Part shown: piece after piece, positions 11,038-50,099 of the stretch
How the letters are laid out: the number at the start of each line of letters is the position of its first letter
Numbering within the stretch: the stretch's first letter is position 1
Source: Malacoraja senta
Lineage: Eukaryota
DNA: 64,000 nt
Direction: 5' to 3'
Assembly (NCBI GenBank): GCA_038087875.1
Contig: CM075979.1
Location: forward strand, 73,718,001 to 73,782,000
Notes under the pieces: generated by a model
What the model was told of the DNA's origin: nothing
Database searches by the model: none
What the model saw: the letters and a program-made list of their open reading frames with translations, nothing else
Made by a program: the position numbers and the translations under genes

Positions 11038-11237
11038 NNNNNNNNNNNNNNNNNNNNNNNNNNNNNNNNNNNNNNNNNNNNNNNNNNNNNNNNNNNNNNN
11101 NNNNNNNNNNNNNNNNNNNNNNNNNNNNNNNNNNNNNNNNNNNNNNNNNNNNNNNNNNNNNNNNNNNNNNNNNNNNNNNNNNNNNNNNNNNNNNNNNNNN
11201 NNNNNNNNNNNNNNNNNNNNNNNNNNNNNNNNNNNNN
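11038..11237. other. Assembly gap (exactly 200 N, unsized scaffold join)
   Basis: Run of 200 N. Confidence 0.99.
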
Positions 11238-11767
11238 TTAATTATGATTCATAATATTTAAATTCACTCTGCTGATGCTGACTGACTCGGTGTGTATTTC
11301 CAATTTTTGCAGTTTTTAGAGTCATATAAAGTCATGCAGCATCTCCGGGTCACTAGTGCAATGAGACATTGGCTCTATGGGCTGGGCCACTAGGCCTCAC
11401 TGTGTCCATTGTAAATATCTGCTTCTCACCCGCTTTCCTTCCCCCTCTCCCTCTAACTTTCAATATCTCTCGCCTTTGCCTGCTCTTTCTTGTACCTTTG
11501 CAATTCCTGTCGCTTCCTCACCTTTCACCACATTCTCTGATCTCCATCTCTGTGCCATTTTCTATTTCTTTCCTGCCTCTCAATCTGCACACCTTGACTG
11601 GAAGTTAAAACTGAGCAAGTGACTGCAGATGGATTTTAAAAGGAAGTAGGAGAGGTGCATCAACTGGCAAAAGACAAGAATTTAAAAAAGGGACAAGGTA
11701 CAGCAAATAGACAGTGATGTGAGGTTACTGCATTTTTTCTAAACTAATGTCTGTCTGATATGTTTAG

Positions 11768-11820
11768 ATGGATCCATACCAACACACCAAGTGCTTTCAG
11801 AGAACAGAGCAGATCTTCAG
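11768..11820 (+). CDS. MICAL3: MICAL3-like 53-nt exon: (D)GSIPTHQVLSENRADLQ
   Basis: tttag acceptor, CAG|gtacct donor, phase 1 to 0, which bridges the minus-strand exon ending at 50768 (phase 1) to the exon starting at 12516 (phase 0); weak resemblance to MICAL3 QVMHAADPLEIQ. Confidence 0.65.
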
Positions 11821-12007
11821 GTACCTTCTGTCAACACGAGGAGAGAACAACCAGAGGTACAGTAAACGCGCTTGTGGTGCTTTGGTTGATCTGTCTTGGA
11901 ATGGAGCTCTGCGTAATGTGGGTAATCTCGCCAGGTGGGGGTTTGTGGAAGATTGGGCGAGTTTTGGGTATATTGATAATGTGGCCAGGGATGAGGCTTT
12001 GGGAGAT

Positions 12008-12155
12008 CTGGTTAGGTGTGGGTCACTGCGGTTCTGGTTAGGTGTGGGTCACTGCGGTTCTGGTTAGGTGTGGATCTCTGGGCGTCTAGTTAGGTGTGGG
12101 GATCTGGGTGTCTGGTTAGGTACGGGTCACTGGGGCTATGGTTAGGTGTGGTGAT
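12008..12155. repeat. Short degenerate tandem repeat, about 26-bp unit (ggttaggtgtgggtcactgcggttct)
   Basis: Two exact copies plus diverged units. Confidence 0.8.
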
Positions 12156-12515
12156 CTGGAATGATTCTTCTGGCTTCCATGACATGCCTGCTGTACATGG
12201 AGTTGATTTGGAAGATTCTCCAAATAGCCCTGAGTGACTCCACAACTCAACATCATTGCGGTCAGAAAGACAGGTTCACCCTTACTGTGGACTTGCTGAG
12301 GGCGCAGCGTATGCATTCGAGCCTGCGTCCAACAGGGTGAAGAGAGGCTCTCCGCGGCTGCAGTAATCTTGCCGCCTTCCCTGTTGTACACTCAGGAAAC
12401 ACGGGTCACTTCGGTGGAAAGGAAGGGGCAATTTCTGGCCACGTGTCTGTGCATTCATAACTAGTCCGTGCTCTGTGTGAGTTTAAAATATCTAATTTAT
12501 TTTCCCTTCAAACAG

Positions 12516-14178
12516 ATCGATAAGCACAGTCCTTCCACAAAACAGTTTTCATCGGAAAGGAGAGGTGAACAGTCGCAGGAAAAGCCCAGCTCTCTTTCCA
12601 CCCTCTCTCCGGTACGGCAGCAGCCTCTGTTCTTCCCAGAAATGTCTTTGCCCTGTTCGCCAGTGGAATCGCAGCCAGCAGTCACCCCTCCTGCCATCTG
12701 CTGCCAGCCCCTGACATCGCCCCCAGCAGGCAGCCCCGTCACTGCCAAGTCCCCGGTGAAGTCCCAGCCACTCTCCTTGGTCCAGACCTCCACCCCCATC
12801 ACCGAACCCGGCAGGGAGTGGCTACGAGGTGGAGGGATCAAGGCAAAGGGCCCTCTGCAGGGGGTGGACAAACCGGCCAGGAAAGACCCCGTGGACGAGT
12901 TCTGGCTGAGGAGCAATGAGATGAGGAGAAATCTGGGAGTCAGTGCTCTGGAGAGAACCAGCGGCTCAGAAACCAGCTTCACCTTGTCCACCACGGGGTC
13001 GGCATCCCCTCAGTCCTTCACGCCGGAGGAGATGTTTGACGAATGCACATCCAGCCCTCAGCCGCTCTCGGGGACGCCCACCGCACCCATGGTGGGAGGG
13101 CAGCTGGTTCCATCCCCCACCCTCAGCCCATCCATCGGGCTGGAGCCCAAGAACTCAGACAGTGGGCAAAGGGACCTGACCAGCACCTCAGGGCTGGGCC
13201 TGAACGGGAGCATGAGTAACACTAGGACCGCTGCCAGTGAGAGCCTCAACAACTCGGACACCATGTTAACACCTCCCTCCAGCCCGCCCCCACCTCCCCC
13301 TGCTGGCGAGGAGCCCGCCACCCTCCGCCGTAAGAAGCAGCAGGGCCCCAGGCCTCGGCCTGCCGAGCAAGGCCCTGCTGCCCGGCCCGGTGACCAGCCC
13401 GCCTCAGGCCTGCAGTCGGCAGGTGTGAGGAAGTCGCTGGTGGAGAGCCTGGACGAGATTCCCTTTGCGGACGACGTTGAGGACACGTACGATGACCGGA
13501 CGCCCGACGCCAGCATCCAGGAGCGGTTCTACACGCCGGCCGGCAGCCTGGAGAAACCCGGGCAGCTGCACCTGGCCCCCGCCAAAGACACGCCTCCCCC
13601 GAGCGGGAAACGGCGGCCCCTCACCCAGATCTCCCCCGAGGCCAAGGAGATCGCTAAAGAGAGGATGAGGGCCCGCGAGAAGTCAGTCAAGAGCCAGGCT
13701 CTCCGAGACGCCATGGCCAAGGAGCTGTGGAAGATGAAGGAAATGGAAGCGGTGGAAGGGTCCCCAGCCCGTCCTCCGATAGCCCAGGTGGCCGAGGCGC
13801 CGGCTCCCCTCACCGCCAAGTTAATCGATGGGGACCAGCCGCAGCAGGAGGCGGTGGTGGAGAAGCCGTTGCCTGCACCGGCACAGGACCTCAGTCTGGA
13901 GGGATCAGGAGCCTCCTCCGAGGGTTCTGCCAGCAAGAACAAGAAGAGAACCTCCCTCTTCTCCCCCCGCAAGAGCAAAAAGGAGAAAAAGTCCAAGACT
14001 GAGAGCAGCCTGACCGAGGAGAGCACCAAGCCCAGGTCCATCTGGAAATCCGTCTTCTCCAGTTACCGGAGGGACAGAAAGAAGAAGGAGGAGAAGGCGT
14101 GCCCCAGCACCCCGTCCAGCAGCATCACCGCCAACTCCGGCACCAGGCGCAGCAATGACATCCTCCGCACCGCAGTCG
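12516..14178 (+). CDS. MICAL3: MICAL3-like large Pro/Ser-rich exon
   Basis: MICAL3 signature peptides DEFWLRSNEMRRNLG, MLTPPSSPPPPPPAGEEPATLRRK, EIPFADDVEDTYDD, ERMRAREKSVKSQALRDAMA, SLFSPRK, CPSTPSS; aacag acceptor, G|gtagga donor. Confidence 0.95.
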
Positions 14179-14259
14179 GTAGGATACGGACATGCACTGC
14201 CCAAAGCACCGCGCACTCACCGTTAAACTGCCCCACACATCGCGCACTCGCCTTCAAAC

Positions 14260-14900
14260 ACTGGCCACACACCACACTCACCCTGATACACTGGACCCTA
14301 ACACACACCACACCACACTCACACTGAAACACTGGCCACACACAACACTCGCCCTGATACACTGGCCACACACCACACTCACCCTGATACACTGGCCACA
14401 CACCACACTCGCCCTGATACACTGGCCCCTAACACACCACACACCACACTCACACTGAAACACTGGCCACACACAACACTCGCCCTGAAACACTGGCCTC
14501 TAACACAGCACACACTCACCCTGATACACTGGCCACACACCACACTCACCCTGATACACTGGCCACACACCACACTCACCCTGATACACTGGCCACACAC
14601 CACACTCACACTGATACACTGGACCCTAACACAACACACACTCACCCTGATACACTGGCCACACACCACACTCACACTGATACACTGGACCCTAACACAG
14701 CACACACTCACCCTGATACACTGGCCACACACCACACTCACACTAAAACACTGGCCACACACCACACTCACACTGAAACACTGACTACGCACCAACACAT
14801 CCTGAAACACTGCCCACACACCACACTCACCCTGATGCACAAGCTCTTAACACACCACACTCACCCTGATACACTGCCCTCACACCACACTCACCCACAA
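14260..14900. repeat. Minisatellite, about 30-bp unit (cactggccacacaccacactcaccctgata)
   Basis: About 20 head-to-tail, slightly variable units. Confidence 0.92.
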
Positions 14901-16069
14901 ACACAGCTCCTAGCATAATGCCGTCTCACTTCCTCAAGCCTCCAATATCCACCTCCAATATCCTCCCTCTCCCTCTCTGCCTCCAATACCCTCACACTTC
15001 TCTGCACCTCCAATGCCCTCACATCTTTGTTTCTTGGGGTGGGAGGTGATCACCATATAGCACTCTATGCCCAACTGTTGCCGTGTTTGACCCTCACGTG
15101 CAAATCATTTAATCACAGTGCAATAAACAAAGCAATTTTTTTGCTTAACTCTGAAAGGCCACCAGAAATAGCCGTCAACTTTCCCCCTTCCCCTACACCC
15201 ACTTACTGACCCTACTTTACATCCAGCGGTCGTCTTCATTAAACTCCATGGACTTTCAATTTTCCGATAAGCCTGCCAGATGGCAAATACATTGAATGCA
15301 TTTCCATCCACGGTGACTTTTCTTGTTTCCATCCTCAAAAGTTTTAATTGAATTAGTTGGACCCAGCCTTGACTTAACATGCAGACGACCCGTGATTAAT
15401 CTTGTCCACCTTAATGACATTTAATGCAGTTCTGCTCATTTTTCCAATGATTTAACAATGATTGATCATACACATTCTGGCAACTAATTTTTCTGTGTAA
15501 CTCTCTTCCACCTTTTAAGCAACAGCGCATTTTTCAATGTGCCATTACTGTGCGGGGAGTGAGATGTGTCGAAACAATCTCAAGCCTTTTCTTAGTCACT
15601 GTTCCTGGGCCAGGGGGTGGCATTATAAGACTCTTTCTCTGGGCACATTGGTGCACCAGAGTTGGGGAACACATACTTCATCTCTGAGTGTTACGCATGA
15701 ATATAGAACAGTGCAGCAAATGAACAGGCCCTTCAGCCCACAATGTCCGTCCAAAACATGATGCCATGGTAAACTAATCTATTCTGCCTGTACGTGATCC
15801 ATATCCCTCCATTCTCTTCATATCTATGTGAATCAAAGCCTCAGGCCCTCACTACTCTCTATGTTAAATAAAAACTTTTCATGCACATCTCCTTTCAATT
15901 TTGACCCTTTCACCTTTAAGCTATGCCCTCTGGTCTTTGACATTTCCACCCTCTGAAAAGTGTTCTGACTGTGTACCTGATTATGCTTCTCATAATGTTA
16001 TACACTTCTAAGTCTTCCCTCAGCTCTGAAGCACCAGAAAAAAAACAATCTAAGCTTGTCCAACCTCTC

Positions 16070-16673
16070 CATATAACCATATATAACCATATAACCATAA
16101 CAGCACGGAAACAGGCCATCTCGGCCCTTCAAGTCCGTGCCGAACATTTTTTTTTTTTTTTTAATAAATACTTCCCCCTAGTCCCATCTACCTGCACTCA
16201 GACCATAACCCTCCATTCCTTTCCCGTCCATATACCCATCCAATCTATTTTTAAAGGATAACATCGAACCTGCCTCCACCACTTCCACTGGAAGCTCATT
16301 CCACACAGCTACCACTCTCTGAGTAAAGAAGTTCCCCCTAATGTTCCCCCTAAACTTCTGTCCCTTAATTCTCAAGTCATGTCCCCTTGTTTGAATCTTC
16401 CCTACTCTCAATGGGAAAAGCTTATCCACGTCCACTCTGTCTAACCCGCTCATAATTTTAAAGACCTCTATCAAGTCCCCTCTTAACCTTCTGCGCTCCA
16501 AAGAATAAAGACCTAACTTGTTCAACCTTTCTCTGTAACTTAGTTGCTGAAACCCAGGCAACATTCTAGTAAATCTCCTCTGTACTCTCTCTATTTTGTT
16601 GACATCCTTCCTATAATTAGGCGACCAAAATTGTACTCCATACTCCAGAATTGGCCTCACCAATGCCTTGTAC
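16070..16673 (-). mobile_element. Young 5'-truncated CR1-like LINE 3' end, nested in an older CR1
   Basis: Open ORF2 C-terminus LVRPILEYGVQFWSPNY..LERRRLRGDLIEVFKI..FFTQRVV; (ATATGGTT)n tail; near-identical to 42036-43180. Confidence 0.92.
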
Positions 16674-16945
16674 CTAATTATACCTAATACTCTAAATCAG
16701 GCAGCATTCTGGTTAAAAATTAGACCAAGTGCTGGCAAATTGGACCAAGTGCTGGCATAACTCCAGGACATTCTGATAAACCTTTTTCTGCGCACTATCC
16801 AAAACCTGTACATCCTTCCTGCAATGGGGCTCCTTGAACTGCATGCAATACACCAAATGTGGCCTCACCATAGACGTAAAAAGCTGCAACATGACTTCCT
16901 GGCTCTTGTACTCAATGTCCTGACTAATGAAACCAAGCATACCAT

Positions 16946-17065
16946 CTGAAGAAGGGTTTTGACCCGAAACGTCACCCATTCCTTCCCTCCAGAGATGCTG
17001 CCTGTCCCGTTGAGTTACTCCAGCATTTTCGGTTTAAACCAGCATCTGCAGTTCCTTCATACACA
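16946..17065 (+). mobile_element. Penelope-derived short repeat with a minimal hammerhead core (CTGAAGA-stem II-GAAACGTC)
   Basis: ctgaagaagggttttgacccgaaacgtc at 16946-16973 followed by the family body. Confidence 0.75.
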
Positions 17066-17511
17066 TACCTTCTTTGACAATCTGTCTACCTGTGTTGCTA
17101 CGTTCAAGGTGCTATGACCTTGGATCCCAAGTTCCTTCTGTGCATTGATGCTGTTAAGGATCTTGCCATTGCAAGAATGAGATGGGGACTATGTACAAGG
17201 ACCTTCCCTAAATACTTTCATAATACAAGGGTGGTGATCTACATGGGGGAACTGTGGGGTTTGGGTGAGTAAATGCTGCATGAAGGTTCTCACTCTGAGA
17301 TCTGGGGGTGCGAGGTATGCAGGATATTTGGACACTATCACTGTGTGGGAAGTGGATATACAAGACATTTTGCCACTGCACAAGGGACATGGGATACACG
17401 TGAGCTCCTTTAGTTCCATCACTCCAAGGGACTGGGCGTCCTGGCCTTGTGTAGACCTTCATTGTTCAACCTATTTCAGGGACACGGTTCTCATGTGGTT
17501 GTTTGTTGCAG

Positions 17512-17606
17512 GACTCCAACTCCGTCAACACCTGAGTTTCTCGGAGGACTCGGACTTGTCCAGTGACGATATACTTGAGAGGACCTCACAGCGCTCCAGG
17601 CGAGAG
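17512..17606 (+). CDS. MICAL3: MICAL3-like exon: GLQLRQHLSFSEDSDLSSDDILERTSQRSRRE
   Basis: Matches MICAL3 LQLRRQLSFSEDSDLSSDDVLEKSSQKSRRE; ttgcag / gtaccc, phase 1 to 0. Confidence 0.95.
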
Positions 17607-18561
17607 GTACCCAGGCACTGCTTTTTGTGTGGGTGTGTGTGCATGTGTGCGCGTGTGTGTGTGCACACTGCGTGCCGCGTGAGTTTTCCATTTGGCTTCT
17701 GGGTCTGTGCTGAGCTAGGCTGGGCCAATTAAAGTGGGATGAAATCTGTAAATATATTGGGGGGGAAGAAGTCAGTCAGGGATCTCACTGGTGAAGATTG
17801 TTTTCAAAGCAGTTCGATTCAGATGTAGGATTGTGCTTGGTCTTCTCATTGGGATTGTAAATGAGATCAGGATTGGGTATCGAAGTGTGATTAGATCGAG
17901 GATTGTCTTGGATACAGGTGTACAGAGATTCAAGTGTGTTGTATTTGAGGAGTCCGAGTGCACAGGGATAGAAGGGTCCAAGTAAACGTGCACAAGGACC
18001 TGGGTAGAGTGATAAATAGATCCATGAGCTCCGAGATAGAATTAGAATAGAAATAGAATTATCCCTGAGATGGAATTATCTGTTTGCAGAAGAACAGGTG
18101 TGCGAGTGCACTTTGCTTCAAGTATACTGTGGGAAAGGGGTCCAAGTGTACGGGTAGAAAGGTCCAAGGTGGTAGTCAAACTGCACTGCGGTAAATACAT
18201 GCATGCTCAATTGTAGGGTGTTAAAGGGAATGGAGCAGAAAGGATCTATAATCAATCAATGTCTACAGCAGTGTAGGAGAACTGGACAAGAGTGGATACA
18301 TTCAATGAACAGGTGATAGAGAGGTGTGTTTGCACAGTTTCAGAAGCACTGAAATATACTGGGCTAGGGTGTGAGGATACGATGGATTGGCTGGTGAGCA
18401 TGAGAGCACATTAGTATTGATTGGTTGGCAAGTGTCAATATGAAGGCAAAATGTTTTTTGTTTTTTTTACTTCTACATTATAGTGCCAGTTTGTCTTTGA
18501 TACTGTGATCTGTTTTCAATCTGTTCCTTTCTAAGTTGTTTTATTTTTCTTCCTTCTTGAG

Positions 18562-18612
18562 ACTGTCTATGTTCCTCATGCTCTGGCATTCAGGAGATCA
18601 TACACGTTGAAG
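18562..18612 (+). CDS. MICAL3: MICAL3-like 51-nt cassette exon: TVYVPHALAFRRSYTLK
   Basis: Long pyrimidine tract, GAG acceptor, AAG|gtagag donor, phase 0 to 0; resembles the recalled alternative MICAL3 peptide S(I/V)YVPHALAF(K/R)RSY. Confidence 0.8.
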
Positions 18613-19089
18613 GTAGAGTGCTGTACACTGATGCTGAGTGGCTGCAATGCAGGCAACACTGTCAATCAATGGTTTTCCTCCACAGATGGAGAAGGGAGGG
18701 TGATGAACGGTGTGGGTTTGAGGGTGTGTGGCCCCATTAGTGTTAATTGGAGATTTAGAGAAGGCGGTTTCATCCTGCGCTGTGAAGGGGAGTAGATTCA
18801 GTCTGTTTGAGGAGGGGGGATAATTTCATGCAGGAGATGGACATTTCAGTGCCTTCAAGGACTGGGAGCGACAGCAATTTAATTTCACATCCTTCTCGGG
18901 CTCCTAGGTTGTGAGGTTTAGGTATTCTTCCATTTACATGTCCTCACCTATTCCATCAAATATTTTTTTCCCTATCAGTTAATCCTTTTCTGTAGCTCAG
19001 CTCCAAGGCATTGACACAAAAAGTATTTCTCACGGCAGTGTTGTCCTTGTCTTCTTACGGGTGTTACTCACTGTCTGCCCCACTGCTGT

Positions 19090-20930
19090 GCTGATTCACG
19101 CAATGGATAAAGCACGAAAGGGGACCATTTAGTCCATATTGACTCAATGGAATAGCAATCCAGCCTGTCCCACTGCACTGCCCTCTCTCCCCATAGCCCT
19201 GTAAATTCTCTCCGGCATTTACTTGCTGCCTTTTGCAAGCTACAATTGATTTTGCCCCTACTACTGTGCCTGGTGGTCCATTCCCGACCCAACCACTTGA
19301 TGTGAAAAAACATAATTTTCTCGCATCACTTTTGGTTCTTTTACCAAGCACCTTATTTCTATGAGACCAGTTCTTATGACAACAATTCCTGTCCCCCTGC
19401 TCTATCAATTCCTTTCAGTTCCAAATCCTTCAATCAGACATCCTCACCAGCTCCTTTGTTTCAAGAGGAACGACCCTTGTTTCTTCAGTCTGTTTACATC
19501 ATCAAAGTTCGTTCTCTTTGGAATCATCTTAGTGAATCTCTTCCTCACTCTTTCACATCACTCCTTAAAGCTTCGGCCCCGAATTGACACAGTATCCCAA
19601 ATCAGTGTTGATAAAAGTGCCCTTGACTTTATATTCCTCCTTCTCATCCTCCCATTAAAATGTAGCACTTCACATTTCTCTGTATTATATTTCATTGAAT
19701 TCCTTGCCTCTAGTTATAAAGTTCAAAATCCCGTTTTGTTTTTGCAACTGCTTTCTTAACCTGACCTGCCACTTTCAACCAACTAAGCAGCACATATACC
19801 CACAGATCTCTCTCTTGTACCCACTTTTGAATTGGGCCTTTAAGTTTATATTCCCTTTTCTCATCCCACAAACTGTAATACTTCATCTCTCACAGTATTA
19901 CATGTCATCTGTCATCTATCTGTCCATTCCACCCGCCTGCCTACAGCTCATTCAAGTCTGTTACAAAACCTCTCGCAGTTCATTACATTTTTTGTGTTTT
20001 GTGTCATCTGCAAATATGAAATTGTTCCTGTACACCTGTTGTTAATATATAAAAATAAATGTCATAGTTCTGGAATGGGCTGCTGGAGAACTCCACTCTA
20101 CACTTCCTACCAGTCTGGAGAAACCCTTTTCACTGCCACTCCATCTGCTTTCGCTTTACCATTTTTTTATCCATGCTGCTATAACCCCTTTTTCCTGTGT
20201 CCTATGATCTTGTTAACAAGCTTTTTTGGCGACACTTAACAAATTCCTTTTAGATATCCCTACATACTTCGTCAATCCCACTTTCCTCATCAACAATCTC
20301 TGTTACTACATGAAAATCTATAACAAGTTAATTTGGACATAATTTGATTGTAACAAATTTATGCTCACTTTCTCTAATCAATCCACATGTCCAAATGACT
20401 GATAATTATCTCCCATTTAATATTTTTTGGACTTTCCCTATTACCGAGGTTAAAGTAACAGATGTATAGTTACTGGCATGAATCTATAGATGTTGGGGTG
20501 ATTATGGCTAGGATTTCTGCAATTTCCTCCCTTATTTCCTTAAGTAACCTAGGATGCATTCCATCTGTTCCAGGTGATTTATACATTCCGTCAACCAGCC
20601 TTTCCATTACCTCCTTGTTGTCAATTTTGAGCCTGTCCAGAATTTCAATAACTTCATTCTATGTGATAACTTCAGCAACATATTTAACCATGGTGAACCC
20701 TGACATAAAGTTCTTAGTACCTCAGCCATATCTTGTGCCTCAATGAGTTTGCTTGTTTTCTGATCTTTGACCTGCACCATCTACCCCCTCATATGACTCA
20801 AGCCTGTTGAAGATTTCTCAATTCTCTTGTACATATGCTGCCAATCTTTTCTTTTGCTCTCCATTTCCTTTTCTACTTCCCCTGAACTTCCTGCAATACG
20901 CCTGTTTTACACAGTTACCAAATGCAATAA
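19090..20930 (-). mobile_element. Old, heavily decayed CR1-like LINE fragments
   Basis: Degraded 3' end and RT-like segments on the minus strand. Confidence 0.55.
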
Positions 20931-20934
20931 GTTC

Positions 20935-28685: not shown

Positions 28686-28736
28686 ACTATTGGGGAGAGT
28701 CTAGTTACAGTGAAATCCTCGACTTGCATCTGGGTG
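28686..28736 (+). CDS. MICAL3: MICAL3-like 51-nt cassette exon: DYWGESSYSEILDLHLG
   Basis: tatag acceptor, G|gtacgt donor, phase 1 to 1; resembles the recalled alternative MICAL3 peptide DYWGES.YS..LDLHLG. Confidence 0.82.
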
Positions 28737-38251: not shown

Positions 38252-38345
38252 TGTAGACAAAAATGCTGGAGAAACTCAGCGGGTGAGGCAGCATCTCTGG
38301 AGCGAAGGAAATAGGCGACGTTTCGGGTCGAGACCCTTCTTCAGA
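38252..38345 (-). mobile_element. Penelope-derived repeat with intact hammerhead core and 14-bp TSD
   Basis: Minus strand CTGAAGAAGGGTCTCGACCCGAAACGTC (38317-38344); TSD ctatagatattggg at 38238-38251 and 38346-38359. Confidence 0.85.
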
Positions 38346-39139
38346 CTATAGATATTGGGAGTTTATTTATAGAATAGCAATTACCTAGAAGCAAGTTATA
38401 GGCTAAAATATGAACAATAGTGATGGGGATGTACAGCATATGTAGAATGGCAGATGTTGAAAGTAAGTTACTGACTGGAATCTAATTGAGAGATCTTGGA
38501 GTTTACTTATGGAATAGTAGATGCCTGAAGGTTGAGTTTGAGTACAGAATCCAAGCAATAATTATTGGATACTTCAAAATTATTTACTGCCTAGAGTTCA
38601 AATAAGAGTTTAATTATAAAATCTAATCAATACATGTTGAGAATCAAATGGGGGAATCCAAGGAAAAATCTATAATCTTACTGAGAACTGAAGGATTTGT
38701 AAGCAGAATCAGTAATAGCAGAAGGGATTTGAGTTGGTCAATTATGTGCAGATTCTAACTGGATTTTTGGAGCATTAGAAGCAAAATAATATGTGGAAAT
38801 ATTCAAATTTCTAATACGTGGAAAAGAAAAATTGAAAATACTCTGCAGATCATGCACTATCTGTGAACAGAGAGATAGAGTCAATGTTTCAGACCAATGG
38901 CTTTTCTTGGAACTGGGAAAAGTTAGAAACAGAATGCATTTTGTTGTTTGGAGAGTGAGGGGGTGTCGGATAGAGGGACTAAATAACACAAGTGTTGGTG
39001 GTGCTTGTTGAGAGAGGTTGGTGACGGGTGTGCCTGGATGAGGCACAAGTAAGAGGTGAAGAAAGAAATTTGAAATACCAGAAGAGATGAGAGGAATAAA
39101 AGAATGACTGCAGTAAATGTGAGATACAAGAATGGAATG

Positions 39140-39268
39140 TGTAGGAAGGGACTGCAGATGCTGGTTTAAACCGAAGATAGACACAAAAAGCTGGAGTAAC
39201 TCAGCGGGTCAGACAGCATCTCTGGAGAAAAGGAATAGGTGATGTTTCGGGTCGAGATTCTTCTTCAG
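39140..39268 (-). mobile_element. Penelope-derived repeat with 11-bp TSD
   Basis: TSD agaatggaatg at 39129-39139 and 39267-39277; mutated hammerhead core. Confidence 0.8.
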
Positions 39269-39434
39269 AATGGAATGCCTGAAACTGTTGGCTTTATTGT
39301 TGAGCTGAGGACTGTATTGAGCCGAGACAGAAGATGAGGTGCTGCTCCTCGAGCTAACAGTGGCCAGTAGCAGAGGGGTCAGGGTGAGGTTACATAGAAT
39401 ATCAGACACCTTAACAAGACTTAGTCTGGAATCT

Positions 39435-40310
39435 AATCACATTTCTGTGCTCGGAGGTCTGTGACCAGTGATGTACCCCAGGAATCACTTACAATTTGTT
39501 GTACGTGGTAATGATCTCGATGTAAACCAGGATGGAGAGGATTAGAAAGTTCACAGATGACAAGGAAATCACTGGTGTTGTTGATAGTCTTCTGCTGCAG
39601 TAGTACATTGGTGAACTGGTAAAATGCACTGACAGATAGAATTTTTTGCGAAAAATGTGATAGGATGCATTTTGGGAGGACTAATAACGCCAGAACAAGC
39701 ATGATGAATGACAAGCCCCTAGGGAACAGAGTGACTTTGGTGTCCAAGGACCCCTGAAACCTCCCAAGTTGGTAAGGTGGGTAAAAAGGCAAACGGGATG
39801 TTTGCCTCCACATAATATAAGACCAGGGAACAATACAGCAATGGAAAGGCCACACCTGAAGTACTAAGTGCAGTTCTGGTCACCACACTGTAGGAAGGGT
39901 ATCATTGCACTGGAAGGAGTGTAGAGGAGATTCTCCAGGATGTTGCCCGCCCGACATGGAGCGTTCCAGTTATGAGGAGAGGCTGGGTTTGTTTTCCTTT
40001 GAGCGAGGGCCATTAAGGTAAACAAAATCCTGAGGGCAAAGACAGGGTAAATGATGAGAGACTTATTTTTAGCAGGGGCGTCTGTGATCAAAGCGCATGT
40101 GTTTGAGACAAATATTAGGAGATGTGAGGAGGTAATTTTTCACACAGGGAGGCACACACAACTTTTAATATACATTTAAATAAACACTTAAAATGCTATG
40201 ACATTGAAGATTACGGGTCGAGTACTGGAAAATGGGATTAGCACAGAAATGTAGTTCGTGGCCAGGTGGATGCAGTGGGCGAATGGGCCTGGTTCTGTGC
40301 TGTATGGCTA
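39435..40310 (+). mobile_element. Old CR1-like LINE 3' portion
   Basis: Decayed VTSDVPQ, KFTDD and QFWSPH-type motifs. Confidence 0.75.
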
Positions 40311-41434
40311 TGACAAGATGTTGAAAGTTCACATATAGAATGCCTTGAAGTAATCTTAATGTGTGATTTTGGAAATAAATATGTTGAAGGCAGCTGTCTT
40401 GGGGCAAAATCGAGGCTGAAATCATAAGATTTGAGCAGTTTATACGTGTGTTACCAGCTAATATTTTACTGAGAAACTTGGATTCATAACTAAAGTGCCA
40501 TTTTCATAGGAACCTCCTATTAAACGTACACGGTTAATGAAATGCTTATCTCCATCCTTCCACTCACAACCACCCCACACACTACAATGTGTAGGCATCC
40601 CCTGAAACTCTGATCCCTGTTTCATCCTGCAAGCTCCTCACCCACACCCAAAGCCGATGATTCCATGTACCCCACCCCAGTCTATGTCTTGGCCTCCAGT
40701 CCTTCCCCCACCAGTGCAACCTTACGCCTGTGTCCTGTCATCTACCTTCTGGTTACAACTGGAGTTTAATGTGGAGGGACAGCAGTATTTCGAGGCAGAT
40801 ATTGGAGTGAGTGACAACCCAGAGGTCAAAAAAAAGATTTGGGGGTTTTAAATAGATTAACAGATTGTGCAGGTCGATTCTGGGCAAGTTTGCACATAGA
40901 ATGAGGGAGTTGGAGTGAGTTACTGGTTAGCATCTAATCAAGACATTCAGTTGATCTATGTTCAGGATAATATCTAACTGGAAGTGAGTTCTAGGCTGGG
41001 ATATAGTTGAGGAATTTGGACATTTTATACATTTTTATATAAGAAAATGCAGATGCTGGAATCTTGTAAAGTACTGGAGTCAGCAGGTCAGACAGCATCT
41101 GTGGAGAGAATGGATAGGTAATGTTTCAGGTCAGGACTGAATGTCAGAATCAGGCTGATTTTTATGTTAGTTTAAAGTTATTTGCCGAATAGTCTGCAAC
41201 CTGTTTGATGATCTCTACGGACTGATGACCTAGGACGAGGTTAAGTCAGTGTGTTGCCCAATGGTTTGAAGTGCAGGGGTTGTGCTATGTTGAAATGATC
41301 CGCTCCAGCTGTGTGTGTACTTACAAGAGACTGTATGACAGAGCTTTTTTCGTGTTGGTGAGTGGCCCGTTGCCTCCTGTCTCATGCATGGCGTGCCTTG
41401 TTGTGGTCTTTGATTGGGATGTGCTCTCTGGCAG

Positions 41435-41534
41435 GAATGGGAAAGAAAGATGACCCTCGCCTGATGCAGGAATGGTTTAAGCTGGTGCAGGAGAAGAACA
41501 GCTTGGTACGCTACGAGTCAGAGCTGATGATCTT
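41435..41534 (+). CDS. MICAL3: MICAL3-like bMERB exon: [33 protein letters not shown]
   Basis: ggcag / gtaagt, phase 1 to 2; MICAL3 match. Confidence 0.97.
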
Positions 41535-42035
41535 GTAAGTAGCAAGAGTTGTTTCTCACAACCTGATCCATTGTTCATTTCTTTCCCTCTGGCGAGGAGC
41601 TTGAGATCGGGACCAAATGGACTGTTGAGATGGACTGTTTCTGCACAGTGCTATACAGCACCCTGATCCTGCATTTCAGCCAACACTCCTTAATAAGCAT
41701 CAAATGTTCCACCCCTGGCATTCTGCTCTTCTATTGATAACCTACTGACCTAAACCAAGCTACCAAAAAGTATTCAAATCAATCTAAATAATTTTAAATG
41801 ACAATATTTGCTATTGGTGTAGATAAAAGCTTTTGTTTGTGTACTATCCAATTAAATCAGATAATACTCCACAAGAATACAATCAAGCCATAGACAAGCA
41901 CAAGAGGTAGACCAGAGAATATACCAGAGTGCAGAATATAGTTTTCAGCATTGTAGCATTGTTCCAGAGAAAAACTCCAATGTTCACAATTGGATGATTG
42001 GTACTAGACCCTAGCACATGAGAGAACCATTCAGA

Positions 42036-43180
42036 ACCATATAACCATATAACCATTACAGCACGGAAACAGGCCATCTCGGCCCTTCAAGTCCGTGCTG
42101 AACATTTTTTTTTTTTTTTTTTTTAAATAAATACTTCCCCCTAGTCCCATCTACCTGCACTCAGACCATAACCCTCCATTTCTTTCCCGTCCATATACCC
42201 ATCCAATCTATTTTTAAAGGATAAAATCAAACCAGCCTCCACCACTTCCACTGGAAGCTCATTCCACACAGCTACCACTCTCTGAGTAATGAAGTTCCCC
42301 CTAATGTTACCCCTAAACTTCTGTCCCTTAATTCTCAAGTCATGTCCCCTTGTTTGAATCTTCCCTACTCTCAATGGAAAAAGCTTATCCACGTCAACTC
42401 TGTCTAACCCGCTCATAATTTTAAAGACCTCTATCAAGTCCCCTCTTAACCTTCTGCGCTCCAAAGAATAAAGACCTAACTTGTTCAACCTTTCTCTGTA
42501 ACTTAGTTGCTGAAACCCAGGCAACATTCTAGTAAATCTCCTCTGTACTCTCTCTATTTTGTTGACATCCTTCCTATAATTAGGCGACCAAAATTGTACT
42601 CCATACTCCAGAATTGGCCTCACCAATGCCTTGTACAATTTTAACATTACATCCCAACTTCTATATTCAATGCTCTGATTTATAAAGGCCAGCACCCCAA
42701 AAGCTTTCTTTACCACCCTATCTACATGAGATTCCACCTTCAGGGAACTATGCACAGTTATTCCTAGATCCCTCTGTTCAACTGCATTCATCAATTCTCT
42801 ACCGTTTACCATGTACGTCCTATTTTGATTTGTCCTGCCAAGATGTAGCACCTCACATTTATCAGCATTAAACTCCCTGCCATCTTTCAGCCCACTCTTC
42901 CAAATGGCCTAAATCTCTCTGTAGACTTTGAAAATCTACTTCATTATCCACCACACCACCTATCTTAGTATCATCTGCATACTTACTAATCCAATTTTCC
43001 ACACCATCATCCAAATCATTGATGTACATGACAAACAACAGTGGACCCAACACAGACCCCTGAGGCACCCCACTAGTCACCGGCCTCCAACCTGACAAAC
43101 AGCCATCCACCATTACTCTCTGGCATCTCCCATTCAGCCACTGTTGAATCCATCTTGCTACTCCACCATTAATACCCAAC
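42036..43180 (-). mobile_element. Young 5'-truncated CR1-like LINE (about 1.1 kb, one frameshift)
   Basis: GVPQGSVLGPLLF..YADD RT core and a 236-aa open C-terminus; frameshift near 42870; nested in a Rex1-type tail. Confidence 0.95.
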
Positions 43181-43379
43181 AATTTAAGACTCATAACAGA
43201 AGCAAAGCAGCTGTTCCTGAGTCTGGTGCTACATGCTTTCAAGCTTTTGTATCTTTCTGCCCAACGGGAGCTGGGAGAAGAGAGAATGACCAGGGTGAGA
43301 AAGGTTGTTGGCTGCCCTCCTGACAGTGTTCCAGGCACCCACAGCCTAGCAGGTCTGAGTTTTTCAAAGATGTGCCTCA

Positions 43380-44365
43380 CATATCACCTTTAAACTTTGC
43401 TGCTCTCACCTTAAAGCTATGTCCTCTAGTCTTTGACATTTCCACTCTGAGCAATAGGTTCTGACTGAATGTCCTATCTATGCCACTCATAATTTTATAT
43501 ACTTCTATCAGGGCTCCCCTCAGCCTCTTGACGCTTCAGAGAAACCAATACAAGTTTGCCCAACCTCTCCTGATAGCTACTACCCTCTAATCCAGGCAGT
43601 ATTCTGGTAAGCCTCTTCTGCACCTACTCCAAAGTCTCTACGTCCTTCCTGTAATGGGGTGACCAGAAGTGCAATCAAAATGCCACCGAACCAAAGTCCT
43701 ATAAAGCGGCAACATGATTCTTAACTCTTACACGCAATGCCCCAACCGATGTAGGCAAGCATACCACACACCTTCTTTACCACTCCATCTATTTGTGTTG
43801 CCTTTTTCAGGGGGCTATGGACTTGGACCCCAAGATCCTTCTATACATCGATGCTGTTAAGGGTCTTGCCATTAACGTTCCCCTTACATTTGACCTCCCA
43901 AAGTGCAACACCTCACACTTGCTCAGATTAAACTCCATCTGCCATTTGCCCCAGGGTGGAAATGCTATCCACACTACCCATGTCTGTAGCTTATCCATAA
44001 CCTGCTGTACACTTTGACGACCGGTCTGCAACTCCACCAGTTTTCATGTTATCTGCAAACTTACTAACCAACCCATTCATGTCCAAGTTGTTTATGTGTA
44101 TCACAAACAACAGAAATCCCAGCACAGTTCCCTGCGAAACTCCACTGACCACAGATCTCCAGCCAGAGTAACAGCCTTCCACCATGAGTAAGCCAGTTCT
44201 GAATCCAAAGGGCTGAGTCATTGTAGACTCCATACATCTTAATCTGCTGGATCAGCCTACCATGCAGGTCATTATCAAATGCCTTTTTAAAATCCATGCT
44301 GACAAAACCCACTCCCCTACCCTCAATGAACACCCTTGTCACCTCCTCAAAAAACTCAACAAATC
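43380..44365 (-). mobile_element. Older CR1-like LINE fragment
   Basis: MDFKKAFD, GVSQGTVLG, KFADN and MEFNLSKCEVLHFGR fragments. Confidence 0.85.
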
Positions 44366-44446
44366 CAGGCCGTAGCCTCACTGGGTCGGATTGAATATCT
44401 CCTGGAGAGATGCAAAGTGATGAACTGTGTTTGTTTCCTGGTGTAG

Positions 44447-44520
44447 TGCCCGGGAGCTGGAGCTGGAAGATTGCCAGAGCAGGCTACAGCAGGAGCTCCG
44501 GGAACGCATGGCCATTGATG
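44447..44520 (+). CDS. MICAL3: MICAL3-like bMERB exon: (F)ARELELEDCQSRLQQELRERMAID
   Basis: gtgtag / gtaggt, phase 2 to 1; MICAL3 match. Confidence 0.96.
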
Positions 44521-45408
44521 GTAGGTGACACTCATGCCTATTCTATTCTCTGTCGGCCCTCTCTGATCTTTCCAGGCCAAAGACACTGGTGGATATTAGG
44601 GCCCCCTCCTGGGGATCACTGCAACTTTTAAGTGATTCGGTGGGCCGTGGTAAGACAGCAGCGCTTGCCACAAACCAGATAAACCCGGGAGCTTCTGTCA
44701 GCATGTTGCTGCAGGTAGCTCACCATGTCTACAAGCCTCACACCAAACACTCCACCCTGAGCTCCATCATGGCAAGATATTCCCAGAGGCAGAGAAAACT
44801 AGGACATTGTCATGTCTCTCTGCCAGGAACACATAGAGGGGAAGAGCAAGCTGCCTCTTACTTACCCATCCACCTCAAAACCCACCTGCCCCACATGCAG
44901 AGACTTGATCCCCCACTGGGCCCGATAGCCACTCAAAAACACACCCACAACTGGGGTGGAAGCAAATCATCCTCAACCTCAAAAAATGACCGCAGAAGAA
45001 GGCAGTCAGTTGGAACAATCAGTATCCACCTTCAATCTAGATCCCTTTCCCCAGTATCCACCTCGATCTCAAGGTATCTAGGTCCCTGTCCCTAGAGTAT
45101 CCTCACCCTTTGTTCTAGGGATATCAAGGTCCCGTTTGCCAGAGTATATCGCCTCACTCTAGTTTCTAGAGTATCATCCCCAGTCTTTGTTCTAGGGGTA
45201 TCTCAGTCCATGTTCCTCAGCTGTTTGTTCTGGGGGTACTTGGGTCCATGGGCCCAGATTACCGGCACTATGTATGTGTGATGTTCTCCCCCTTTCCCAT
45301 GGGCATGAGGCATTTGACTCATTTTGTGACCTGCCTCGGCCCTTGCGCTGGGTGCTGTCTGGACCATAAGCTGCTCCGTGCTCTGACCGTTCCCTATGTG
45401 CTTGGCAG

Positions 45409-45593
45409 ACAATCTGAAGAACAGCGAGGAGCTGCTGGAGGAGAAGCGGATCTTGAACGAGATGCTGGACGTGGTGGAGCAGCGGGATGCGCTGGTGGCT
45501 CTGCTCGAGGAGCAGCGGCTCCGCGAGAAGGAGGAGGACAAGGACCTGGAGGCGGTGATGCTGACCAAGAGCTACAACCTGAACTGGTCATAG
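45409..45593 (+). CDS. MICAL3: MICAL3-like terminal coding exon ending ...TKSYNLNWS*
   Basis: EEKRILNEMLDVVEQRDALVALLEEQRLREKEEDKDLEAVML..LNWS-stop; MICAL3 C-terminal signature. Confidence 0.97.
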
Positions 45594-48500
45594 ACAGTCC
45601 ACCTGTGGCCGCAGTCACTGAGTTCTGGGCTTCAGCAGCCGGCAGGAAAGGCAAGAGGCTGTCTTGCAAATGGCTGGTGGAGCAAACCCCTGCAGCCTTT
45701 CTACTGCCGTGTACACCGCAGAATACTACTTGTGCTGTGTTCTCAGGTGTTAGCCACACATGATCCCACCTGACCCAAGGGCAACCAGATATTGGCCAGA
45801 TTTACAGCATAGGGCAGGTGCTCGGAGGGTAAGGAACACAGGAATTTGGGGTGCTGAGTTATTTCATCAGATTCGTAGAAACTGATTCTTTTTGGTGAGG
45901 GAACAGTAGAACTGAACGGCACAGGAGCTCGAGTGAGCCCTTCAGTGAGTATAGACCTGGTTCAGTCCACCAATTCTTCCTCTATGCGCATCAGAAATAG
46001 AAACGCTGCACCCTGAGGTGGAGGCTTGCTCCTCTTGTTTACCCAGTCCAGAGGGGCAGCTGCCCTTCACAAGTCGGCCCATAGGTATCATCAAGCCCTC
46101 TGCAGCTTGCTGCTGCTGATCTGGGAGCTTGAAGTACTGAGCACAGAGTGAGCCACTCCCAGCTGCTGTAGGATCCAGTTACCTTTCCTTTGGGGAGGGT
46201 GGGCCGTGTGTGATAGAACACACGCAGGAGCAAAAAAAAACTTTTAAATGCCATGACGTGAGTAAAGGGAGGTGGAAAATACCAGTGGTGGGGCATTCAA
46301 TGGAGTCCAGCGTCCTGCCACCATTTAACAAGCACACGGCAGCTTACCCTGTTCCCACCTGTTCACTTACACGCTGTACTCCTTCCAGCTCTAATTTAGT
46401 TCACTTGAACATTGTACCTCCTAAAACACTTACACATCCCACTTGCTCCCATTTGCATCCCAAAGGCTTTTCACTGTATCTCGGTACACGTGACAATAAA
46501 CTAAACTAAACTCCAGTAAATACAACATAGTTCGCTCCAGTAAAGACAACATCGTCCACTCCAGTAAACACAATGTAGCCCAGTCCAAAGGGGATTCAGA
46601 AGAAATCCCAGCAATACCTAACAACGGGATGCCCCCTTGAAAGAAATGTTGAAGAGGAGGTTGGATGGGCCTTTCAGATCAAAGGGTACAGGTCATACTG
46701 ATTTAGGTAAGTAAAGGTGAATGGAGTGGAGCAAAGTGACAGCTGAGCGGCCAGTTTCTGTGCCATAACTCCAGAATGTAGCTCCCATCATTGCACCAAG
46801 ACGCATGCGCACGTCACTGCACACTCACGATCTGTATCTTCCCAGATCTAACCCTTCATATTTACACACGTGCATGCACCCATCCCATCCATCGCAACAT
46901 CACCATCACACCATGTACCCATGCACTCCCAACACCAATGTGGAAATTATTTACGAGCTACCTTTTCTCTCATGTGAGGACCAGAAATGGACACAGTGCT
47001 GCACGTGTGGTCCAGTTAGCATTTTACAGTCTTTGCAAGATCTCTCGGCTCTCATAGTCTGCATTTTGACCAATAACAGCAAGTATTCCAGATGTCTCAT
47101 TAACCATTATCTACCATATCTGGGACTTTCAGATCCAACGGAACGTGCACTCCAAACCCCTGCTGGAGCGATATTTCCCACTATCCTCTTGCTTGGTTGC
47201 GTCTGCCTTCCCCAAATGCATGACATTATCCATCGTCATATAACATTGCCTGTCTGACCAGACTGTTGATTTTTTTGCTGGTTGTGACTTTCTTCCTCAC
47301 TGTTCGTCACGTGGCCACGGTTTACATTACTGCAATCGCTTTACCATATTACCCAGAGTTAAGTCCAAATCATTGATACACACTGTGAAAAGCCTTTTGG
47401 TCTCAACTGCAAACAGCCTCCCACTCACCAATGACCAGTAGCTTTAGTTTTCTCCGTCAGAGTAGGAGTGCAGATTGGCAGTCTCCCTTGAATCCCATAG
47501 GTTTAATTTTCTTCCCATGGGATGGGATGTGGTCAAAGGTTTTGCTGAAATCCATGTATGTACTTAGATGCCATCATCACCCCCTCTTGATACCTCCTCA
47601 AAAATATCTAATTTGTCTTCCTCAGCCTTCCCTAACAAATCTATGTTGGCCATCCTTGATTAATCCATAATGATTAATCATTTCCCGCACTGATCTCAGA
47701 CTGGCTGACGTAATAACTTGTTCTCCACCCTACCTTGCTTTTCTAAAACATTGCCATTCTGGTGACCCTCCACTTATTTTACAGCTGCTATGAGGGAAGA
47801 CTGGAAACTGTCCACAAGTCAAACTGCTTGGACACCAAGTGTATTGCATCCAACTCCCCACCCTTGAACAGGCACCTTTCCTTCTCCAACACGCTCCACC
47901 CATCCTGACATCACTTCTTTTCAGATGAGTCACCGGCTCCTGTATCTACTTCTACCTGTCACTTTGTTCTTGTAAATCAATGAACTTTAGAAAGCACAGG
48001 CTTTTCCTCCCTTCCCCCTCGTCACAAGCATCCAACCATGCCCTCCATTTATTTTCTTATCTCTGCAACCTTTCCCAGCAATTCTGCATTTCCCCCACCA
48101 CAATCCCATATGCTTATATACTAACCATGTCCCGCTCTGCCCATTATTCCAACTCTGATTTCTGCCCCTATACACTGCATCAGTTTATAATTCCTACTCG
48201 GGATATGCATGGCTCCTATTCCTACTCGGGATATGCACGGCACCTATCATTGCCTGCGCCTAGTTGCTCTAGAGAAGGTGTAGTGAGTCACTTTCTATTG
48301 AAAGAACTCTCAGGGTGCTATTTAGGTAGGGAATTCCAAGATTGATTTAACAATGATGAAGGAACAGTGAAGTCACTCCAAGCCAGGACAAATGCAGAGA
48401 GATTGTTTATTTAAGCACTGATCCTGTCAGCTATCCTGTCAGTTTTATTTCAGCGTGAGACTGCATCAGCATTGGGCTGGTGGTGTTCCCATGCATCTGC

Positions 48501-49899
48501 TTTCCATTGCCGTGGCCATGGCTGTTGCAGAAGCGTTGGCAAGGAACTGCAGTGCATCCTGTTGCTAGTCAACAAGGTACCTCTCTGAGGTACTGGAGGG
48601 CAGCTGGTAATTTAAACTAACACGCAAACATCCTTTACTGCTTGTGCAAGGAATTAATGTTTGGGGTGGTGCTTGAGGAGCTAACCATGCTTTGTCCTGA
48701 ATGTTGTCGAACTTGTAACAGCACTCGTACAGGCAGGTGGACAGTATCCCATCCCACTCCTGGCTTGCCTCAGAGACTGAGAAGACACTTTGGAAGTCAG
48801 GAAGTGAGTCATCCACAGCTAGATACAACGTTCGACCAGCTCCTCTCATGGACACCATATTCATGTACATGGTCTAATTTCTGGTTCGAAGACAATGCCC
48901 AGGGTATGGATGGTGGAGATTCAGTAATGGTAATGCTATCAAATGTCAAGAGGGGGTTGCTAGAGCCTCACTTGTTGAGATAATCATTGTCTGGTACTTG
49001 TGAGTTGCAAATGTTACTTGGCACTTACCAGCCTGTGCCTGAATATTGTCCAGGTCTTGCTGCATGTAGACATGGATTGCTTCAGTACTGAAAGAGTTGC
49101 AAATGGAACTGAAGACTGCGTGCATGGGTTCCCGTGTGTGGGTGGGTGGGTGTCTCTGGGTGGGTGTGTGTGTGTTTCATTGTGTCTCAGCTCTCTTTCG
49201 ATGTGGTCAGGGTTACAACAGTGTTGGACCTGTGGTTTAACACAGTATTATGTACAGATGAGTGTGTGGGTATGTGTATGATGCGGCACAGAGGGGTACA
49301 AATATATTTAAGAATGAAATCCTGTGGAATGTAATTCCAGAGGTCAGGTTTGGAGCTTGTGTCTGTGACTTTGTGGCTACGCTCAAACTGGAGTCTGAGT
49401 CAGACGGAGAGCAAGATGCAGCCCAGGGGCTGGAGAGAAGGCCCTGCCTACTGACAGCCTCTCTGGGAGAAGATTTATAGGCCGAGTTGGTCTGTGAATC
49501 AGGTCAGTTCCCAATGGGAACGTGATTTATTGTGATTGTACAGTGTGCTTTATACATTTAAAATACATACCTTTCATTCGGTTTCATCCCGGCTCGGGCT
49601 TGCTCCTGTAGTTATAGAGTTGTACGGCACAGAAATGGGTCCTTCGGCCCCTCATGTTCATGCCGATCTTTTTGCCCAACTACGTTCATTTCATTTGCCT
49701 GCATTTGAACTGTCTCAATGCTTCTTAAACGTAGTGACTGTATCTTGCAGCCTGCTATGTCAGTGCTGGGTTCCCTTGCAGGGATCAAGCAATGAGGCCT
49801 GGGTATGCTGGAGGAACCCGGCCCCACGGCCTCCCCCCCCACTTCTCTCCATGACACTCCTCTCTCACGCCCCTCTCTCACACTCCTCTCTCACACCTC

Positions 49900-50099
49900 N
49901 NNNNNNNNNNNNNNNNNNNNNNNNNNNNNNNNNNNNNNNNNNNNNNNNNNNNNNNNNNNNNNNNNNNNNNNNNNNNNNNNNNNNNNNNNNNNNNNNNNNN
50001 NNNNNNNNNNNNNNNNNNNNNNNNNNNNNNNNNNNNNNNNNNNNNNNNNNNNNNNNNNNNNNNNNNNNNNNNNNNNNNNNNNNNNNNNNNNNNNNNNNN
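49900..50099. other. Assembly gap (exactly 200 N)
   Basis: Run of 200 N. Confidence 0.99.

What the first reader, a model, noticed from the sequence alone, without database searches (positions are those of the whole stretch)
11038..50099. One MICAL3 gene split across opposite strands: the 38.7-kb gap-bounded contig appears inverted
Seen: upstream MICAL3 exons (63121, 52748, 50768) run on the minus strand toward the second gap, while all downstream exons (11768 to 45593) run on the plus strand away from the first gap. The exon sets are complementary, non-redundant and phase-compatible, and both breakpoints are 200-N joins. Inference: reversing 11238-49899 restores one continuous minus-strand gene. 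A scaffolding error is most likely; a real inversion would break the gene or need trans-splicing. Automated annotation would likely call two partial genes.
Basis: partly seen in the sequence, partly recalled or inferred. Interest (0 to 1): 0.8.

Follow-up and report, generated by a model that had tools for sequence, protein, structure and literature searches.

The report
MICAL3 gene split by mis-oriented contig
One ordinary MICAL3 gene reads on opposite strands on the two sides of an assembly gap, almost certainly because a 38.7-kb contig was placed backwards in the scaffold, and the same join also hides several exons.

Summary
The window has exactly two 200-N gaps (11038-11237, 49900-50099), which bound a 38,662-bp contig B. 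On its + strand, B carries the whole 3' part of a MICAL3 orthologue: 11 exons from 11768 to the stop at 45593, including the bMERB domain. Contig C (50100-64000) carries the preceding exons on the - strand (52916-52748 and 50997-50768, and probably 63205-63121). No exon occurs twice. All exons have AG/GT sites, and joining them conceptually gives one open frame of 1020 codons.

Two corrections are needed:
- RNA contigs of related species show the first B exon is 11768-11856, not 11768-11820.
- The two exon sets do not abut. In that RNA the exon just upstream of 11768 ends '...EEACGEVGSP', and it is absent from the whole window. About 125 residues conserved in sharks (3-4 exons) are missing between 50768(-) and 11768(+).

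The two contig ends that must face each other (50100 and 11238) both point away from each other in the scaffold. The best explanation is a scaffolding orientation error with unassembled sequence at the join (about 0.8). A real inversion is not excluded, because no RNA or long reads of this species could be used. This is an artefact of low interest. The scan noted other oddities at 200-N gaps in this genome.

The parts
11038..11237 (.). Assembly gap 1 (200 N) between contig A and contig B
   Evidence: Contig A ends inside an interspersed LINE-like repeat.
11238..49899 (+). Contig B (38,662 bp). It carries the 3' part of MICAL3 on the + strand and is probably reversed relative to contig C.
49900..50099 (.). 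Assembly gap 2 (200 N) between contig B and contig C
   Evidence: Contig B ends in a CT-rich low-complexity run.
63121..63205 (-). Probable MICAL3 exon (85 nt). It has an AG acceptor and a GT donor and ends in phase 1, which fits the next exon. No homology was detected.
52748..52916 (-). MICAL3 exon 'EPWQAKRLRGTPERIELEN...' (169 nt)
   Evidence: tblastn to P0122 residues 1065-1127, E 3e-18. Splice sites. Held by RNA runs of related species.
50768..50997 (-). MICAL3 Glu-rich exon '...SSSEYEMEEEE...SESSY' (230 nt) with donor GTGAGT. It ends with one hanging base.
   Evidence: tblastn to catshark P0003 residues 2-52, E 1e-7. Sequence. Phase.
11768..11856 (+). MICAL3 exon (89 nt) 'DGSIPTHQVLSENRADLQVPSVNTRREQPE'. 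It starts with two bases that complete a codon.
   Evidence: RNA contigs of two related species show the joint 11856|12516 and run on upstream of 11768 into an exon that is not in the window. Weak tblastn match.
12516..14178 (+). Large MICAL3 exon (1663 nt)
17512..17606 (+). MICAL3 exon 'LQLRQHLSFSEDSDLSSDDILER...'
   Evidence: The RNA loose end behind 14179 matches its start.
18562..18612 (+). MICAL3 cassette exon 'TVYVPHALAFRRSYTLK'
23857..23964 (+). MICAL3 exon 'KPYSEEELNSKLTRRVQKAARRQAKQEELKRLHRAQ'
26095..26188 (+). MICAL3 exon, start of the bMERB domain
   Evidence: Pfam PF12130
28686..28736 (+). MICAL3 cassette exon 'DYWGESSYSEILDLHLG'
33457..33525 (+). MICAL3 cassette exon 'VEALVGAPRRRPLSFCHCCTHDR'
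41435..41534 (+). MICAL3 exon, bMERB domain
   Evidence: Pfam
44447..44520 (+). MICAL3 exon 'ARELELEDCQSRLQQELRERMAID'
45409..45593 (+). Last coding exon of MICAL3, end of the bMERB domain, with the stop codon at 45591-45593
   Evidence: Pfam

Best explanation
This is one ordinary, intact MICAL3 orthologue, an F-actin monooxygenase gene. Its middle exons lie on contig C and its 3' exons on contig B.

In the scaffold, B and C are joined in the wrong relative orientation across arbitrary 200-N joins. The simplest repair is to reverse the short contig B (38.7 kb), which brings its end at 11238 next to 50100.

That true junction is not a small gap. It hides unassembled or unplaced sequence holding at least one exon, and probably three or four. 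The split across strands is therefore an assembly artefact, not biology.

Shown here: the exon content, order, strands, splice sites and phases; the absence of duplicated exons; the coincidence of both breakpoints with the gaps; and the absence of the exon that precedes 11768 in mRNA of relatives.

Inferred: that the genome of the sequenced animal is collinear, and that B rather than C is the misplaced piece.
For: - Gaps are exactly at both breakpoints.
- The + strand exons 11768-45593 and the - strand exons 52916-50768 cover consecutive, non-overlapping parts of MICAL3.
- Every exon has AG/GT sites, and the conceptual join is a single 1020-codon frame. Neither half shows decay.
- RNA contigs of two related species (about 96-97% identical) splice 11856 to 12516. 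They continue upstream of 11768 for 155-173 nt into '...GAAGAGGCTTGTGGTGAGGTTGGATCTCCAA' (EEACGEVGSP), the homologue of the shark 'REKEEACG' exon. This exon is nowhere in the window, so sequence is missing on the 11238 side of B.
- In the bamboo shark the Glu-rich exon, the intermediate exons and the large exon lie on one strand over about 45 kb. The catshark model also has them in one gene.
- Four RNA runs of related species that hold the large exon of B also hold the C exon 52748-52916.
- Short contigs are known to be mis-oriented often in Hi-C scaffolds (PMC7672694).
- As unchecked leads only: other notes on this genome report oddities at 200-N gaps.
Against: - There is no direct evidence from the sequenced species. 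The only same-species runs found (X19, X20) are short-read DNA contigs that do not bridge contigs.
- The RNA contigs come from other species and do not reach the 50768 exon, so no single molecule was seen linking B to C.
- Reversing B does not explain why the ETV6-like gene in contig A lacks its ETS exons, so the region may hold more than one error.
- Shark annotations include C-terminal-only 'MICAL3-like' models (P0001, P0003). A separate 3' transcription unit is therefore not absurd.
Confidence: 0.8

Rival explanations
1. There is a scaffolding error of another form. Contig B could be correctly oriented while contig C, with whatever follows it beyond the window, is inverted or misplaced. Alternatively B belongs elsewhere, and a further unplaced contig carrying the missing exons sits between the two. 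This is still an artefact, but the repair is not 'reverse 11238-49899'.
For: - Contig C runs off the window, so its size and far end are unknown.
- Exons are missing between the two halves, so at least one more piece of sequence exists somewhere.
- The ETV6-like PNT gene on the + strand of contig A has no ETS exons anywhere in the window. This suggests the A/B join is also unsound.
Against: - Reversing the one short contig bounded by gaps on both sides is the single most economical change.
- Short contigs are the ones scaffolders mis-orient.
Confidence: 0.13
2. There is a real inversion in this species or individual. One breakpoint lies in the intron between the Glu-rich exon and the 11768 exon, the other downstream of MICAL3. 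This would split the gene into a 5' half (monooxygenase-CH-LIM) and a separate 3' half (bMERB), possibly read from a new upstream context.
For: - It cannot be excluded with the data at hand.
- Gaps often form at repeats, and repeats also mediate inversions.
- C-terminal-only MICAL3-like models exist in shark annotations.
Against: - Both breakpoints would have to coincide exactly with assembly joins.
- All exons of both halves are intact, with conserved splice sites and an unbroken frame.
- The exon that precedes 11768 in relatives is not upstream of B in the scaffold.
- Close relatives express the normal exon order.
Confidence: 0.05
3. There are two partial MICAL3 copies: a 5' fragment on the - strand and a 3' fragment on the + strand, left by duplication and decay.
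For: None beyond the opposite strands.
Against: - The exon sets are exactly complementary, with no overlap.
- There are no 3'-type exons on the - strand of the 38.7 kb next to C, and no 5'-type exons in contig A next to B.
- There are no stops or frameshifts.
Confidence: 0.02

Closest known systems
Locally mis-oriented short contigs in Hi-C or other scaffolded assemblies (as treated by HiC-Hiker, PMC7672694)
   Same: A short contig bounded on both sides by fixed-length N joins. Its orientation is inconsistent with its neighbour, and a gene is broken exactly at the joins.
   Different: Reversal alone does not heal the gene here, because several exons are also missing at the true junction. The scaffolding method of this assembly is not known to me.
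Vertebrate MICAL3 (shark MICAL3-like P0001 and P0003; full-length P0122)
   Same: The same exon order: 'AKRLRGTPERIELEN' exon, Glu-rich exon, large Ser/Pro-rich exon, cassette exons and the C-terminal bMERB domain. Identity is 56-63% to sharks over the large exon and up to 100% over single bMERB-domain exons.
   Different: The N-terminal monooxygenase, CH and LIM exons lie outside the window. The 'IDPLEI.ADVHWTH', 'AVRAWL' and 'REKEEACG' exons are not in the assembled letters. The gene is about five times more compact than in the catshark (34 kb against 179 kb for the same part).
Gene-disrupting chromosomal inversions
   Same: Two halves of a gene lie on opposite strands.
   Different: Nothing marks these breakpoints except assembly gaps, and both halves look fully functional.

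Membership tests
MICAL3 orthologue | C-terminal bMERB (Mical/EHBP Rab-binding) domain | tested here: met
   PF12130 hits on three + strand exons cover profile positions 1-134.
MICAL3 orthologue | Best matches are MICAL3 rather than MICAL1, MICAL2 or MICAL-like proteins, over the MICAL3-specific central region | tested here: met
   The 619-aa ORF hits proteins named MICAL3 from sharks, reptiles, birds, mammals and fish, with E down to 2e-181. The full-length 2203-aa relative P0122 aligns collinearly.
MICAL3 orthologue | N-terminal FAD monooxygenase, CH and LIM domains | not testable with these tools
   No such exons are in the window. They should lie beyond 64000 on the - strand.
Scaffolding orientation error | Both breakpoints coincide with scaffold joins (N runs of fixed length) | tested here: met
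   200-N runs at 11038-11237 and 49900-50099.
Scaffolding orientation error | Reversal restores order, strand and reading frame, with no exon duplicated | tested here: met
   However, intermediate exons remain missing.
Scaffolding orientation error | Independent long-range evidence from the same individual (long reads, Hi-C or a map) contradicts the scaffold | not testable with these tools
Only short-read DNA contigs of the species were found (X19, X20).
Scaffolding orientation error | mRNA joins the exons of the two contigs | tested here: inconclusive
   RNA contigs of related species continue upstream of 11768 into a MICAL3 exon not present in the window. They stop 155-173 nt upstream, before the 50768 exon. 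The same RNA runs hold exons of both contigs.

The most novel reading that the evidence does not exclude
The inversion is real in this species. MICAL3 would then be split into an N-terminal enzyme gene and an independent C-terminal Rab-binding (bMERB) gene. In the present layout the C-terminal gene lies downstream of, and on the same strand as, the PNT exons of an ETV6-like gene, which could create a PNT-MICAL3 fusion transcript.
Probability: 0.04. Interest if true: 0.5.

Novelty: not a real feature. Interest (0 to 1): 0.1.

Why it matters
This matters mainly for people who use this assembly. Automated annotation here would call two partial MICAL3 genes, or a chimera of the ETV6-like PNT exons with the MICAL3 3' exons, which lie on the same strand across gap 1. 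Synteny or inversion analyses would score a false 38.7-kb inversion. The region needs re-scaffolding, and several MICAL3 exons need to be recovered. It says nothing new about MICAL3 biology.

Tried and rejected
- Same-species transcripts in the protein collection: the 619-aa ORF and its first 200 residues gave no near-identical proteins. No transcript contig of the species could therefore be fetched.
- The Heptranchias protein P0001 is not on record for context. The catshark gene is too long for DNA to be returned.
- Overlap between contig ends: blastn of the four ends found no overlap, only a 55-bp repeat match.
- Strand composition skews per contig and per 4-kb bin are dominated by repeats and give no orientation signal.
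- ETS-domain exons that might be restored by the same reversal: none on either strand of the window.
- MAFFT of the conceptual protein with relatives mis-aligned the Glu-rich region. The tblastn coordinates were used instead.
- One same-species DNA contig (X19, record 3) runs 112 letters past 11238 into the gap.
- Searches of the scan's notes for 'MICAL' and 'MICAL3' found nothing.
Full report
**Layout.** The window holds exactly two runs of N, each 200 long, at 11038-11237 and 49900-50099. They divide it into three contigs:
- Contig A: 1-11037.
- Contig B: 11238-49899 (38,662 bp).
- Contig C: 50100-64000.

No exon or open frame touches either gap. The nearest exons lie 530 bp (11768) and about 2.7 kb (the ETV6-like exon near 8290) from gap 1. 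They lie 668 bp (50768) and 4.3 kb (45593) from gap 2. The letters at the gap edges therefore say nothing about continuity. Contig A ends inside an interspersed LINE-like repeat and contig B ends in a CT-rich simple run.

**What the gene is.** The 619-aa ORF at 12468-14327(+) has no Pfam or PDB match. It does hit proteins that their sources name MICAL3, in sharks, reptiles, birds, mammals and fish:
- Heptranchias perlo MICAL3-like: E 2e-181, 62% identity.
- Scyliorhinus canicula MICAL3-like P0003: 56% identity.

An exhaustive search added a full-length 2203-aa relative, P0122. Pfam finds the bMERB domain in three + strand ORFs, covering profile positions 1-134 in order.

**Exon map.** tblastn of P0003, P0001, P0121 and P0122 against the window gave the exon positions. 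Inspection of the splice sites then fixed the boundaries.

On the + strand of B:
- 11768-11856
- 12516-14178
- 17512-17606
- 18562-18612
- 23857-23964
- 26095-26188
- 28686-28736
- 33457-33525
- 41435-41534
- 44447-44520
- 45409-45593 (stop)

On the - strand of C:
- 52916-52748, matching P0122 residues 1065-1127 at E 3e-18.
- 50997-50768, matching catshark residues 2-52 at E 1e-7.
- 63205-63121, a probable further exon. It has good AG/GT sites and a compatible phase but no detectable homology.

Every exon is flanked by AG and GT. No MICAL3 residue range is found twice. No MICAL3 exon lies on the - strand of B, on the + strand of C, or anywhere in A. The LIM, CH and monooxygenase exons are not in the window.

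**Phase.** The phases of successive exons fit:
- The 52748 exon ends with two hanging bases.
- The 50997-50768 exon is 1+228+1, so it ends with one base (G).
- The 11768 exon starts with two bases (AT) and ends in phase 0.
- The large exon starts in phase 0.

Joining the three C exons to the eleven B exons gives 3063 nt, which reads as 1020 codons with only the terminal stop.

**RNA evidence (the single read-laying run).**
- The two runs that hold almost all words of the large exon (X19, X20) proved to be DNA of the same species. Their contigs cover introns at about 100% identity and are broken at repeats.
- Two RNA runs of related species (X1 and X5, about 96-97% identical) each gave a contig that covers 11766/11768-11854 and then skips 659 bases to 12514. 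The ends are GT..AG with the cut two places to the right, so the intron is 11857-12515. The frame stays open, and the extra residues align with the catshark.
- Both contigs run on behind 14179 into letters that match the start of the exon at 17512.
- Both also run on before 11768, for 155 and 173 letters. Their last 30 letters read ...GGAAGAGGCTTGTGGTGAGGTTGGATCTCCAA, which translates as EEACGEVGSP plus one hanging base.

That last sequence is the homologue of the shark '...LEQLVREKEEACG' exon (P0001, P0003). It is not the 50768 exon. A search of the whole window on both strands, allowing three mismatches, finds it nowhere.

**The missing exons.** Catshark residues 53-177 have no match in the window, even at very permissive settings. 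These residues include 'ALRIRQIISPIDPLEIKADVHWTH', 'AVRAWLDSLS', 'EVELSPDDD...' and 'SDAEAENLMISYTEELEQLVREKEEACG'.

In a bamboo-shark contig (L001), the Glu-rich exon, the 'AVRAWL' exon, the 'EVELSP' exon and the large exon all lie on one strand, spread over about 45 kb. In the window only 0.67 kb (50767-50100) plus 1.28 kb (11238-12515) of that interval is assembled.

The two exon sets are therefore neighbours in the gene but do not abut. At least one exon (shown by RNA of relatives), and probably three or four (inferred from sharks), are missing between them. Some of these are cassette exons in other species: P0122 lacks the IDPLEI and AVQAWL exons that P0121 has. The missing exon seen in RNA also ends in phase 1, which explains why the direct conceptual join stays in frame.

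**Interpretation.** For the gene to be collinear, the contig end at 50100 must face the end at 11238, with the missing exons between them. In the scaffold these two ends point away from each other: 50100 faces 49899 and 11238 faces 11037. Both inconsistencies sit exactly at fixed-length N joins, and the piece between them is short.

Short contigs have few Hi-C contacts and are known to be mis-oriented often in scaffolds, with damage to gene prediction (PMC7672694). Both halves of the gene are intact. Four RNA runs of related species (X9, X10, X12, X15) hold exons of both halves.

I therefore rate a scaffolding orientation artefact at about 0.8 in the form 'B reversed'. I give a further 0.13 to other mis-join forms: C being the misplaced piece, or an unplaced contig belonging between them.

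One point favours a messier error than a single flip. The ETV6-like gene on the + strand of contig A has a SAM_PNT domain at 5461-5820 (Pfam E 6e-20), which continues at about 8250 with '[15 protein letters not shown]'. It has no ETS-domain exon anywhere in the window on either strand. The A/B join therefore also cuts a gene, whichever way B lies.

**What is not shown.** No RNA and no long reads of the sequenced species were available to me. The RNA contigs of relatives end before reaching the 50768 exon, so no single molecule links B to C.
- A real inversion (about 0.05) would need both breakpoints to coincide with assembly joins and both halves to stay intact.
- Two decayed partial copies (about 0.02) would need exactly complementary exon content.

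Composition skews, overlaps between contig ends and searches for same-species transcripts in the protein collection gave nothing. One same-species DNA contig extends 112 letters into gap 1.

**Earlier notes of the scan.**
- One note on this window (s1-179780) concerns the ETV6/ETV7-like PNT gene. I confirmed the PNT domain and add that its ETS exons are absent here.
- Two notes on other pieces of this genome (s1-203363, s1-207042) report gene or repeat oddities at 200-N gaps. I did not test them. They are only leads that joins in this assembly may be unreliable.

**Verdict.** The feature is most likely an assembly artefact around an ordinary MICAL3 gene. It is of low scientific interest but of practical value for curating this assembly.

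Noticed in passing
window 5461-5820 and about 8139-8300 (+), contig A: These are exons of an ETV6/ETV7-like gene. Pfam finds SAM_PNT at E 6e-20, and the next exon reads '[15 protein letters not shown]...'. No ETS-domain exon exists anywhere in the window on either strand, so this gene is also cut off at gap 1. In the present layout its PNT exons lie upstream of the MICAL3 3' exons on the same strand, which invites a chimeric gene model.
   Followed up: partly
window 57417-58421 (-): An uninterrupted 334-aa Tc1/Sleeping-Beauty-type transposase ORF (HTH_Tnp_Tc3_2, HTH_SB and DDE_3) lies inside a MICAL3 intron in contig C.
   Followed up: partly
window 42141-43380 (-), 16178-16663 (-), 10758-10910 (-), 24604-24780 (-): These are copies of a LINE-like retroelement (RVT_1 fragment at 42868-43380; recurring 'LGLYSLERRRLRGDLIEV' tail), all antisense to MICAL3 in contig B. 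Contig A ends inside a related repeat.
   Followed up: partly
window 14258-14896 and 12007-12151: A minisatellite with a 30/66-nt unit (about 20 and 9 copies) lies directly after the large MICAL3 exon. A 26-nt array of 5.6 copies lies in the intron before it. Same-species short-read DNA contigs break at both.
   Followed up: partly
window 11768-45593 compared with the catshark gene: The 3' part of MICAL3 spans about 34 kb here, against 179 kb for the corresponding catshark gene model. Its introns are about five times more compact.
   Followed up: no
proteins P0001 and P0003 (sharks): Shark annotations carry C-terminal-only 'MICAL3-like' models that start in the Glu-rich exon or in the 'EEACG' exon, even in chromosome-level assemblies. 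This points either to an internal promoter or to a recurrent splitting of this long gene by annotation pipelines.
   Followed up: no
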